Source: Octopus sinensis (taxonomy: Eukaryota). From it: DNA of 47,874 nt. Below, in pieces: positions 14,014-14,099 of this stretch; the stretch's first letter is position 1; the number at the start of each line of letters is the position of its first letter. A program made the position numbers and the translations under genes. The notes below the pieces were generated by a model. The model saw nothing but the letters and a program-made list of their open reading frames with translations, searched no databases and was not told where the DNA came from. The stretch spans positions 1 to 47,874 of the forward strand of contig NW_021834510.1 in assembly GCF_006345805.1 (NCBI RefSeq). The letters run 5' to 3'.

Positions 14014-14099
14014 TTGGCTGATGAGCACTCAGCATCTTAAATCTGGTGTAATACTTTCAACTTTTAATAAAATGATGTAGTGTGAAACAATTGTACCAA
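14014..14099 (+). ncRNA. Type I hammerhead ribozyme with extended stem II
   Basis: UUGG-CUGAUGA-GCAC(59-nt stem II region)GUGU-GAA-ACAAUUGU-A-CCAA: intact core, stem I UUGG/CCAA, palindromic stem III, GUA triplet. Confidence 0.75.

What the first reader, a model, noticed from the sequence alone, without database searches (positions are those of the whole stretch)
14014..14099. Recurrent type I hammerhead architecture with a 55-60 nt extended stem II and palindromic stem III
Seen in sequence: the same layout occurs at 14014-14099 (+), 42797-42885 (+), 42535-42624 (-), 43403-43492 (+) and 46970-47057 (-), with 3' halves at 35.3-35.5 kb. The helices covary while the core stays fixed. Stem I is UUGG/CCAA, UUUAG/CUAAA, UUC/GAA or UGCAG/CUGCA. 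The stem II base is GCAC/GUGU, AUAC/GUAU or GAAA/UUUC. Stem III is always an 8-nt palindrome (ACAAUUGU, ACGAUCGU, ACACGUGU) before a GUA cleavage triplet. Established: PLE terminal repeats carry minimal type I HHRs with short stem II and palindromic stem III thought to act as dimers. Inference: a long, length-conserved stem II is a distinct variant that short-helix descriptors would miss, and it could supply tertiary contacts or a protein/RT docking site. Whether it is already described needs a literature and Rfam check.
Basis: partly seen in the sequence, partly recalled or inferred. Interest (0 to 1): 0.9.

Follow-up and report, generated by a model that had tools for sequence, protein, structure and literature searches.

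The report
Long-armed hammerhead ribozymes in octopus retrotransposons
The window carries the 3'-end hammerhead ribozyme motif of Penelope-like retrotransposons, in a form whose second helix is 45-70 bases long instead of the usual 10-25. This long form has about 26,000 copies in this (octopus-like) genome, and I could not find it described in the papers or in Rfam.

Summary
Three keep an intact core: 14014-14099, 42797-42885 and 43403-43492.

The pattern CTGANGA-N45-70-GAAAC-NNNN-GTA occurs 3 times in the window against 0.00 expected. It occurs 26,133 times in the 2.72-Gb genome against 466 for a reversed control.

Stems I, II and III covary in two independent clades:
- Clade 1: 83% of cells paired, against 29-48% when partners are slid.
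- Clade 2: 88.5% paired, against 34-47% slid.

In 61 of 83 sampled copies, stem III is a perfect 8-nt palindrome (chance about 6%).

The motif lies 0.6-1.5 kb after the stop codon of an ORF with a C-terminal GIY-YIG-like domain. Longer homologues of that ORF weakly match RT and GIY-YIG profiles. The motif is about 35 nt from the element's 3' end, and the elements are inserted in (TA)n. So these are Penelope-like element hammerheads, not Naiads and not retrozymes.

Helix II length is constant only within a family. Across the genome it runs from about 10 to about 100 nt. A short-helix copy also sits in the window, at 10652-10685(-).

Rfam finds none of them, and it misses the short form too. In the papers I could read, a "large" or "long" helix II means 6-8 bp.

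Verdict: a new variant of a known kind. Self-cleavage and any role for the long helix remain untested.

The parts
14014..14099 (+). Copy A. Type I hammerhead motif: stem I UUGG/CCAA, core CUGAUGA (14018-14024), 59-nt helix II, GAA, palindrome ACAAUUGU. The predicted cleavage site is after GUA, between 14095 and 14096.
   Evidence: Sequence; pattern matches; profile hit with E=8e-28. The apical hairpin is partly mutated compared with sister copies L030 and L044.
14100..14132 (+). 3' tail of copy A (..GUCAUUAUUGUUGCUUAUUUUGAG). It ends at a (TA)n/(TG)n microsatellite and marks the element's 3' terminus.
   Evidence: Alignments A1 and A2; the tail motif is conserved across families.
42797..42885 (+). 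Copy B. Intact hammerhead motif: stem I UUUAG/CUAAA, 60-nt helix II with a GCUGCAA-UAU-UUGCAGC apical hairpin and AAUAAA on its 3' strand, palindrome ACAAUUGU. The predicted cleavage site is between 42880 and 42881.
   Evidence: It belongs to the family whose longest copies carry an ORF with a C-terminal GIY-YIG-like domain.
42886..43036 (+). Tail of copy B (to 42919), followed by an optional extension of about 115 nt (AUAAUCACCCCACAUUA...) that ends at (TA)n.
   Evidence: Shared at 80% identity with copy E. The same extension sits on the opposite arm in L028.
42500..42624 (-). Copy B'. An inverted, 5'-truncated partner of B, made of tail plus hammerhead motif. Its core is broken by a 1-nt insertion (GAAAAC). 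It abuts (AT)n at 42480-42499.
42625..42796 (.). Centre of the head-to-head pair B'/B: the upstream element sequence of both arms, forming a long inverted repeat.
   Evidence: The sub-threshold Rfam miRNA hits here are artefacts of the inverted repeat.
43403..43543 (+). Copy C, from a different family. Core CUGAAGA (43411-43417), 56-nt helix II (GAAAAGACACAA.../...UUGUGCCUUUC), palindrome ACACGUGU, predicted cleavage between 43484 and 43485, stem I UUC/GAA, then a tail containing AAAUAAAA.
   Evidence: profile hit with E=3.6e-47. Its family lies about 600 nt after an ORF ending in a GIY-YIG-like domain. Covariation in alignment A3.
46929..47057 (-). Copy D. A decayed copy with core UUGAAGA and UAA in place of CUGANGA and GAA. 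Stem I UGCAG/CUGCA, palindrome ACGAUCGU, and a tail ending at (TA)n.
35314..35508 (.). Copies E'(-) and E(+). A head-to-head pair, both truncated inside helix II, so only the 3' halves remain: AAUAAA, GAAACGAUCGUA, tail. E(+) continues into the same extension as B, to about 35620.
10621..10690 (-). Short-helix-II hammerhead motif of a related, very abundant Penelope-like family: ACUGU-CUGAUGA-ACAGCAACGA-GAAAC-UCAGA-GUA-ACAG, then a 37-nt tail ending at (TA)n. It serves as the comparison form.
   Evidence: position in the family's 3' region.
10700..11681 (+). 5'-truncated ORF remnant of that Penelope-like family: a region conserved with the other families' ORFs (inferred RT thumb), a Cys-rich linker, and a GIY-YIG-like C-terminus. 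It lies head-to-head with the short hammerhead copy.
   Evidence: More than 150 genomic copies at 85-99% amino-acid identity, with open frames up to 766 aa. Homologues of the related family of copy C show weak RVT_1 and GIY-YIG Pfam matches.

Best explanation
These are the 3'-terminal hammerhead ribozyme modules of Penelope-like retrotransposons (PLEs) in an octopus-like genome. The ORFs I read end in a GIY-YIG-like endonuclease domain, and longer homologues weakly match reverse-transcriptase profiles.

Shown:
- Each motif has the complete type I hammerhead core (C3-U4-G5-A6-N7-G8-A9, G12-A13-A14, A15.1-U16.1, then GUA).
- Stem I is short and open, 3-6 bp.
- Stem III is reduced to an 8-nt palindrome.
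- Helix II is expanded into an irregular rod of 45-70 nt (roughly 20 bp in the fold predictions). In one clade it carries a conserved bulged U after base pair 5, a sequence-conserved apical hairpin (UGYAAU..UURCA) and an A[A/U]UAAA hexamer.
- The motif sits 0.6-1.5 kb after the ORF stop and about 35 nt before the element's 3' end, and the elements are inserted into (TA)n.
- Many copies are 5'-truncated head-to-head pairs.

Inferred:
- As with other PLE hammerheads, two copies pair through the palindrome to form a double hammerhead and cleave after GUA, probably slowly and with protein help.
- Genomic copies end about 35 nt downstream of the cleavage site, so reverse transcription uses RNA that was not cleaved at that motif.
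- Helix II is the only closed helix and makes no loop-loop contact, so its length is free to drift. This would explain the range of 10-100 nt among related families.
- The long rod most likely stabilises folding in very AU-rich RNA and has picked up 3'-UTR functions, such as a platform for the element's protein next to the reverse-transcription start, and a poly(A)-like hexamer.
For: Abundance:
- Window pattern: 3 matches against 0.00 expected.
- Genome: 26,133 matches against 466 for a reversed control.

Structure:
- Clade 1 (alignment A2, 23 sequences): 82.9% of cells paired against 29-48% slid; 17 of 26 pairs changed on both sides; covariation score 0.439 against at most 0.143; 0 of 500 shuffles reach it.
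- Clade 2 (alignment A3): 88.5% paired against 34-47% slid; 9 pairs changed on both sides.
- 61 of 83 sampled copies have a perfect palindrome, and 58 of 83 have at least 3 contiguous stem I pairs. Neither feature was required by the search pattern.
- The predicted homodimer minimum-energy structure is the classical double hammerhead in 4 of the 5 non-window copies folded, with ddG of -6 to -8.6 kcal/mol.

Element context:
- ORFs ending in a GIY-YIG-like domain lie upstream.
- Their homologues are 700-750 aa and give weak RVT_1 (E=4e-3) and GIY-YIG (E=1e-3) matches.
- Copies end in (TA)n.
- The family of copies B and E is 99% identical genome-wide, with ORFs up to 947 aa.
- Related families have a short helix II, both in the window and in other organisms.

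Literature: PLE hammerheads are type I, have a palindromic stem III, act as dimers, and occur as opposite-strand pairs 100-700 bp apart. Reverse transcription starts internally, and cleavage is protein-assisted and dispensable in vitro, in a lizard PLE.
Against: - No cleavage data exist for these sequences.
- Single-sequence folding of the window's own copies is no better than shuffles (z from -2.0 to +1.2), and the minimum-energy folds of A and B are not the hammerhead fold.
- RNAalifold predicted no consensus structure on alignment A2.
- No Rfam hammerhead model matches.
- Families were found by searching for the core, so core conservation across them is partly built in by the search.
- The two near-full-length copies I inspected have a single 3' hammerhead and no direct terminal repeat. 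That differs from the textbook pLTR-ORF-pLTR layout and leaves the partner for dimer formation unclear.
- I did not read an RT domain in a copy that also carries the long-helix motif.
- Published PLE hammerheads cleave poorly in vitro.
Confidence: 0.8

Rival explanations
1. A hammerhead-derived but catalytically dead 3'-UTR structure. On this reading the fold, and especially the long helix II and the conserved tail, serves only as the recognition or priming element for the element's reverse transcriptase. The core is kept as part of that binding site.
For: - Copies end about 35 nt past the cleavage site, so the reverse-transcription template was uncleaved.
- The tail AUUCUUGUUGCUU and the apical hairpin are conserved in sequence, beyond what pairing requires.
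- In a lizard PLE, hammerhead mutants did not affect insertion in vitro, and no cleaved ends were seen in RNA-seq.
- PLE hammerheads have low activity in vitro.
Against: - All catalytic core positions and the GUA triplet are kept across families that differ at about 35% of other positions.
- The dimer-enabling palindrome is maintained through covarying changes: AAUU, GAUC, ACGU, AUAU, CGCG, GGCC.
- A pure protein-binding site would not need either feature.
Confidence: 0.2
2. Helix II is primarily a regulated poly(A) site. The A[A/U]UAAA hexamer on its 3' strand and the U/GU-rich tail would form a canonical cleavage-polyadenylation signal. Folding of the ribozyme would hide the hexamer, sorting transcripts into polyadenylated mRNA or read-through reverse-transcription template.
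For: - The hexamer lies 17-26 nt before the ribozyme cleavage site in 10 of 29 clusters, against 1 of 29 in the 5' half of helix II. Eight more clusters have it in the 45-nt tail.
- The only variable position in the hexamer toggles between AAUAAA and AUUAAA.
- The tail is U/GU-rich and conserved.
Against: - The sequence is about 70% A+T, so such hexamers are common by chance.
- The clusters that carry it are mostly one related clade, so this is few independent events.
- Other families lack it inside helix II.
- No 3'-end data are available.
Confidence: 0.12
3. Non-autonomous 'retrozyme'-type elements that circulate as small circular RNAs, rather than parts of autonomous elements.
For: - Animal retrozymes also carry type I hammerheads and are linked to PLEs.
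- Most genomic copies are short fragments without ORFs.
Against: - Copies are not tandem arrays of 150-300 bp. They are 5'-truncated fragments and head-to-head pairs of elements several kb long whose ORFs are open for up to 947 aa.
- The tandem repeat layout that defines retrozymes is absent in the window.
Confidence: 0.04
4. A chance match of short core words in AT-rich, palindrome-rich DNA, or miRNA-like hairpins.
For: - Sub-threshold Rfam miRNA hits at 42622-42799.
- Weak folding z-scores.
Against: - 0.00 expected in the window.
- 56-fold excess over the reversed control genome-wide.
- Covariation in two clades.
- The miRNA hits lie on the inverted-repeat centre, not on the motif.
Confidence: 0.01

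Closest known systems
Minimal type I hammerhead ribozymes of Penelope-like elements (Cervera & de la Pena 2014, PMC4209133; Lunse, Weinberg & Breaker 2017, not readable here)
   Same: - Type I topology and the same catalytic core.
- Short open stem I.
- Stem III reduced to a palindrome that allows a double hammerhead.
- Thousands of dispersed copies, often as opposite-strand pairs a few hundred bp apart.
- Association with elements whose ORF family carries RT and GIY-YIG matches.
   Different: - Helix II is 45-70 nt here (up to about 100 nt in other families of this genome). The published forms have 4-8 bp plus a small loop.
- In one clade, helix II carries conserved internal features: a bulged U, a conserved apical hairpin and an A[A/U]UAAA hexamer.
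- In the copies inspected, the motif is a single 3'-terminal module, not part of a direct terminal repeat.
Short-helix hammerhead of the sister PLE family in the same window (10652-10685, minus strand) and in relatives from other organisms (L136, L137)
   Same: - Same layout: ORF, then a 3' UTR of about 1.1 kb, then the hammerhead, then a tail of about 35 nt, then (TA)n.
- A GIY-YIG-like ORF end that aligns by eye with the ends of the long-helix families (not scored).
   Different: - Helix II is only 10-23 nt.
- The stem III loop is 5 nt and is not a perfect palindrome in the window family.
Naiad and Chlamys PLEs, reported to lack canonical hammerheads but with eight 'HHR_half_core' cases whose halves lie 35-50 nt apart (Craig et al. 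2021, PMC8557442)
   Same: - Insertion bias for (TA)n.
- Complex tandem and inverted insertions.
- A tail extension at one end.
- Core halves separated by tens of nucleotides.
   Different: - The octopus elements have the endonuclease at the C-terminus of the ORF, whereas Naiads have it at the N-terminus.
- Here the separated halves are shown to enclose a covarying helix.
Animal non-LTR retrozymes and Schistosoma, newt or cricket satellite hammerheads
   Same: Type I hammerheads of metazoan repeats. Some need dimers because stem III is weak.
   Different: Those have a 4-bp helix II with loop-loop contacts to a 6-bp stem I, and they occur in tandem arrays of 150-300 bp that yield circular RNAs. 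None of this is seen here.

Membership tests
Hammerhead ribozyme (type I) | Conserved catalytic core: CUGANGA, then GAAA, with A15.1-U16.1 and an NUH cleavage triplet | tested here: met
   Present in window copies A, B and C and in 83 sampled genomic copies. Copies B' and D are mutated. Because the core was the search key, its presence in the genomic sample is built in by the search.
Hammerhead ribozyme (type I) | Three helices around the core, supported by covariation, with the open end at stem I | tested here: met
   The count of structure pairs on alignment A2 and alignment A3. Stems I, II and III all show changes on both sides of pairs. Controls with slid partners pair at only 29-48%.
Hammerhead ribozyme (type I) | Site-specific self-cleavage | not testable with these tools
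   This needs transcription and cleavage assays, or mapping of RNA ends.
Hammerhead ribozyme (type I) | Match to the curated Rfam hammerhead covariance models | tested here: not met
   No hit at gathering score and none at E<=10. The ordinary short PLE hammerhead in the window also gets no hit, so this test does not discriminate.
PLE-type minimal hammerhead | Diminished stem III with a palindromic sequence that allows a double-hammerhead dimer | tested here: met
   61 of 83 copies have a perfect 8-nt palindrome. The palindrome covaries. Predicted dimers adopt the double hammerhead.
PLE-type minimal hammerhead | Compact helix II (published range 4-8 bp plus a small loop) | tested here: not met
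   Inserts are 45-70 nt in these copies. In the literature, 'large' or 'long' means 6-8 bp.
PLE-type minimal hammerhead | [quoted passage not shown] | tested here: inconclusive
   Present in some families, such as copy D's type (U.U at the base of helix II). Absent in the types of copies A, B and C, where position 10.1 pairs directly.
PLE-type minimal hammerhead | Location in the terminal (pLTR) region of an element encoding RT plus GIY-YIG endonuclease | tested here: inconclusive
   The motif lies 0.6-1.5 kb after the stop of an ORF ending in a GIY-YIG-like domain, and about 35 nt from the 3' end. The RT and GIY-YIG assignments rest on weak Pfam matches in homologues. No direct terminal repeat was seen in two long copies.
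Naiad clade of PLEs | GIY-YIG endonuclease at the N-terminus, RT at the C-terminus | tested here: not met
   The GIY-YIG-like domain is at the C-terminal end of the ORF, just before the 3' UTR that holds the hammerhead.
Animal non-LTR retrozymes | Tandem repeats of 150-300 bp, each bounded by type I hammerheads with loop-loop contacts | tested here: not met
   Copies are dispersed, or form head-to-head pairs of elements several kb long. No tandem arrays occur in the window.

The most novel reading that the evidence does not exclude
The expanded helix II is a functional switch rather than a passive arm. It buries the element's A[A/U]UAAA poly(A) hexamer, so forming the ribozyme fold and polyadenylating the transcript exclude each other. 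Each transcript would then be directed either to become mRNA, or to become a read-through template that keeps the downstream tail where reverse transcription starts.

A related consequence: PLE clades now described as lacking hammerheads (the Naiad 'half-core' cases) may in fact carry long-helix hammerheads.
Probability: 0.12. Interest if true: 0.75.

Novelty: new variant of a known kind. Interest (0 to 1): 0.5.

Why it matters
Hammerhead motifs in animal genomes are usually counted with descriptors or covariance models that assume a compact helix II. In this genome, about three quarters of the intact-core PLE hammerheads have helix II inserts of 45-100 nt: roughly 31,000 of about 42,000 above background. 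Such searches would miss them.

This bears on three points:
- How widespread ribozymes are in retrotransposons.
- Whether PLE lineages reported as hammerhead-free really are.
- How much the peripheral helix of a minimal hammerhead can be loaded with other signals.

It also supplies a young family (copies 99% identical genome-wide, open frames up to 947 aa) in which the unresolved role of PLE hammerheads could be tested.

Tried and rejected
- An unmasked self-BLAST of the window was swamped by microsatellites and was useless.
- RNAalifold on the 23-sequence alignment predicted no structure. I therefore specified the structure by hand and counted pairs against controls.
- Pfam found nothing significant in the window's ORF pieces or in the GIY-YIG-like ORF end of copy C's family. 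Family placement rests on homologues.
- I suspected the (TA)n-targeting copies might be Naiads. I rejected this because the endonuclease is C-terminal.
- I tested whether the 115-nt extension after copy B is the element's 5' end. It does not match the 5' ends of two long copies, so its origin stays open.
- An Octopus bimaculoides contig with a related ORF showed no motif in the 1.4 kb available.
- Lunse et al. 2017 and Arkhipova et al. 2017 could not be read, and the Craig et al. supplement is not held. I therefore cannot exclude that a long-helix-II form was shown in one of them.
- The pattern hit at 38434-38492(-) was dismissed as chance.

Full report

Reading the window at the stated coordinates confirms every copy.

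| Copy | Coordinates | Layout |
|---|---|---|
| A | 14014-14099 (+) | UUGG-CUGAUGA-[59 nt]-GAA-ACAAUUGU-A-CCAA |
| B | 42797-42885 (+) | UUUAG-CUGAUGA-[60 nt]-GAA-ACAAUUGU-A-CUAAA |
| C | 43403-43492 (+) | UUC-CUGAAGA-[56 nt]-GAA-ACACGUGU-A-GAA |
| B' | 42535-42624 (-) | inverted partner of B, with one extra A in the GAAA box |
| D | 46970-47057 (-) | decayed core (UUGAAGA, UAA) |
| E, E' | 35.31-35.51 kb | head-to-head pair truncated inside helix II |

- A profile built from genomic relatives finds exactly these seven places and no others.
- The full pattern CTGANGA-N45-70-GAAAC-NNNN-GTA matches 3 times against 0.00 expected from shuffles.
- A looser pattern gives 4 against 0.44. The extra hit, 38434-38492(-), lacks stem I and the palindrome and is probably chance.

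**2. How common is it?**

The window is contig C10981 of a 2.72-Gb assembly.

| Helix II insert | Matches | Reversed-pattern control |
|---|---|---|
| 10-40 nt | 11,700 | 597 |
| 45-70 nt | 26,133 | 466 |
| 71-100 nt | 6,092 | 514 |

- The long form is therefore the majority class in this genome.
- Helix II length is conserved within families (55, 57 and 60 nt dominate my sample), not across the class.
- The best named protein relatives are from Octopus sinensis and O. bimaculoides. I infer an octopus genome from that.

**3. Is it a structure?**

I sampled 83 distinct copies from the first 8.8 Mb of contig 1 plus the window. These features were not demanded by the search pattern:
- 61 of 83 have a perfectly palindromic 8-mer at stem III (chance about 6%).
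- 58 of 83 have at least 3 contiguous stem I pairs.
- Most helix II inserts fold as a single long hairpin whose ends pair.

The copies fall into about 29 clusters, with different stems and different 3' tails.

For the clade that holds window copies A, B, D and E (alignment A2, 23 sequences), I wrote the hammerhead structure by hand and counted pairs:
- 82.9% of cells pair, against 29-48% when partners are slid by 1-3 columns.
- 17 of 26 pairs show changes on both sides.
- The covariation score is 0.439, against at most 0.143 for slid partners.
- No shuffle out of 500 reaches the observed value.

For the clade of copy C (alignment A3, 8 sequences from three subfamilies):
- 88.5% of cells pair, against 34-47% slid.
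- Nine pairs changed on both sides, six of them in the basal 13 bp of helix II.

Caveats:
- RNAalifold predicted nothing on A2.
- Single-sequence folding of the window copies is not better than shuffles (z from -2.0 to +1.2), and the minimum-energy folds of A and B are not the hammerhead fold. The helices are AU-rich, and the window copies are partly decayed.
- The support comes from comparison between copies, not from thermodynamics.

**4. What element carries it?**

Copy C's family:
- The motif lies about 600 nt after the stop of an ORF with a GIY-YIG-like C-terminus. I inferred by eye that an RT-thumb-like region precedes that C-terminus.
- Database homologues of that ORF are 700-750 aa. 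They give weak Pfam matches to RVT_1 (E=4e-3) and GIY-YIG (E=1e-3).

The family of copies B and E:
- Copies are 99% identical across the genome.
- A homologous endonuclease-type ORF ends 1.46 kb before the motif.
- Open frames reach 947 aa.
- Long copies read: (TA)n, ORF, 1.46 kb, hammerhead, a tail of about 35 nt, (TA)n.

Features shared across families:
- Copies end about 35 nt after the predicted cleavage site, with a conserved AUUCUUGUUGCUU-type tail directly at a (TA)n run.
- In head-to-head pairs, one arm often runs on for about 115 nt more.
- Head-to-head (-,+) pairs 170 bp to 2.9 kb apart are frequent.

All of this matches published descriptions of Penelope-like elements: 5'-truncated inverted partners, a one-sided tail, (TA)n targets and hammerheads near the ends. 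The endonuclease is C-terminal, so these are not Naiads.

**5. Short and long forms coexist.**

- The window's own ORF remnant (10700-11681) belongs to a very abundant family: 17,333 first-look candidates, with open frames up to 766 aa.
- That family's hammerhead has a helix II of only 10 nt (ACGGCAACGA). It sits about 1.1 kb after the stop and 37 nt from the (TA)n-flanked end.
- One such copy is in the window, at 10652-10685(-), head-to-head with the ORF remnant.
- Two relatives from other organisms, found through the protein, have helix II inserts of 12 and 23 nt.

Expansion of helix II is therefore a variable trait among related elements.

**6. What is inside the long helix?**

In clade A2 the following are nearly invariant while the surrounding pairs covary:
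- a bulged U on the 3' strand after the fifth base pair (19 of 23);
- an apical hairpin, UGYAAU-NN-UURCA;
- the string A-A-U-W-A-A-A, which always reads AAUAAA or AUUAAA, lying 22-26 nt before the cleavage site.

Across all clusters the hexamer is in the 3' half of helix II in 10 of 29, in the 5' half in 1 of 29, and in the 45-nt tail in 8 of 29. The clusters with the hexamer are mostly related, and the DNA is very AT-rich. I therefore treat the poly(A)-signal idea as a minority hypothesis.

**7. How it most likely works.**

Shown: the anatomy, covariation, abundance and element context described above.

From established knowledge: PLE hammerheads with a palindromic stem III are thought to cleave as dimers, and they cleave slowly in vitro. 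In a lizard PLE, cleavage was protein-assisted and dispensable for insertion in vitro, and reverse transcription started internally, which produced the 'tail'.

Consistent with that:
- Predicted homodimers of four young copies adopt the classical double hammerhead, with an intermolecular 8-bp helix III and swapped stem I. The ddG is -6 to -8.6 kcal/mol.
- Genomic copies extend about 35 nt past the cleavage site, so the templates were uncleaved at that motif.

Inference:
- Helix II is the only closed helix and has no loop-loop partner, so its length is unconstrained.
- The long rod stabilises the fold and has probably acquired 3'-UTR roles, such as protein docking next to the reverse-transcription start and perhaps the poly(A) hexamer.
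- Catalysis itself is untested.

**8. Comparison with what is known.**

- Rfam 15 gives no hammerhead hit at gathering score.
- It gives none at E<=10, either on the window copies or on eight intact copies from eight clusters.
- It also misses the short PLE form, so the whole PLE class is outside Rfam's reach.
- Cervera & de la Pena (2014) call a helix II of 6-8 bp 'large'. A 2026 paper from the same laboratory uses 'long helix II' for 6-8 bp.
- Craig et al. (2021) noted eight 'half-core' cases with halves 35-50 nt apart, and did not count them as hammerheads.
- A 2026 repeat annotation of Octopus vulgaris lists PLEs without mentioning ribozymes.
- I could not read Lunse et al. 2017 or Arkhipova et al. 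2017. Prior depiction of a long-helix form there cannot be excluded.

**9. Verdict.**

- It is a new structural variant of a known kind, the PLE hammerhead.
- It is very abundant in this genome and would probably be missed by tools that assume a compact helix II; I tested only Rfam's models.
- Its catalytic activity and the function of the long helix are open.
- Interest is moderate: 0.5.

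Noticed in passing
window 10621-10690 (-) and 10700-11681 (+): A short-helix-II hammerhead (10-nt helix II) lies head-to-head with a 5'-truncated ORF remnant ending in a GIY-YIG-like domain. Both belong to a very abundant Penelope-like family (17,333 first-look candidates, open frames up to 766 aa).
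   Followed up: yes
genome G000, e.g. C1:4992002-4992120, C1:33771408-33771519: Recurrent families match the hammerhead core with helix II inserts of 71-100 nt: 6,092 hits against 514 for the control. I did not check their pairing or their element context.
   Followed up: partly
L123-L133, L138, L139 (genome copies of the family of window copies B and E): Copies are 99% identical to each other, with open frames of 800-947 aa. This points to a Penelope-like element that was active very recently, or still is.
   Followed up: partly
window 42920-43036 and 35509-35620; L028 1356-1470: A conserved extension of about 115 nt (AUAAUCACCCCACAUUA...) follows the normal 3' end on only one arm of head-to-head pairs. 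It does not match the 5' end of two long copies, and its origin is unexplained.
   Followed up: partly
alignment A2 columns 58-64 and 72 (window 14070-14076 and 42856-42862 for the hexamer): An A[A/U]UAAA hexamer lies on the 3' strand of helix II, 22-26 nt before the cleavage site. A bulged U after the fifth base pair is conserved across families whose neighbouring pairs covary.
   Followed up: partly
window 17410-22210: A GC-rich block (about 50% GC against about 30% elsewhere) holds remnants of a LINE-like retrotransposon: RVT_1 with E=2.4e-12 at 19648-20256, and zf-RVT at 20358-21308.
   Followed up: partly
window 14160-14400, 24809-25053, 37917-38096, 40019-40238, 40964-41105: Five copies of a repeat of about 230 bp (GTTTCAGTCATTTGACTGTGGCCATGC...), 72-78% identical to each other. 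It is probably a SINE. One copy lies directly after copy A's microsatellite.
   Followed up: no
window 42622-42799: Sub-threshold Rfam matches to several miRNA precursor families (E down to 9e-18, all far below gathering score). They are artefacts of the long inverted repeat formed by the head-to-head pair B'/B.
   Followed up: yes
window 38434-38492 (-): This place matches the loose core pattern in GC-rich sequence, but it has no stem I, no palindrome and no GUH. It is most likely a chance match.
   Followed up: partly
whole window: The window is extremely dense in (TA)n, (TG)n and (CATA)n microsatellites. Every Penelope-like copy end in the window abuts one, consistent with (TA)n being the insertion target.
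   Followed up: partly
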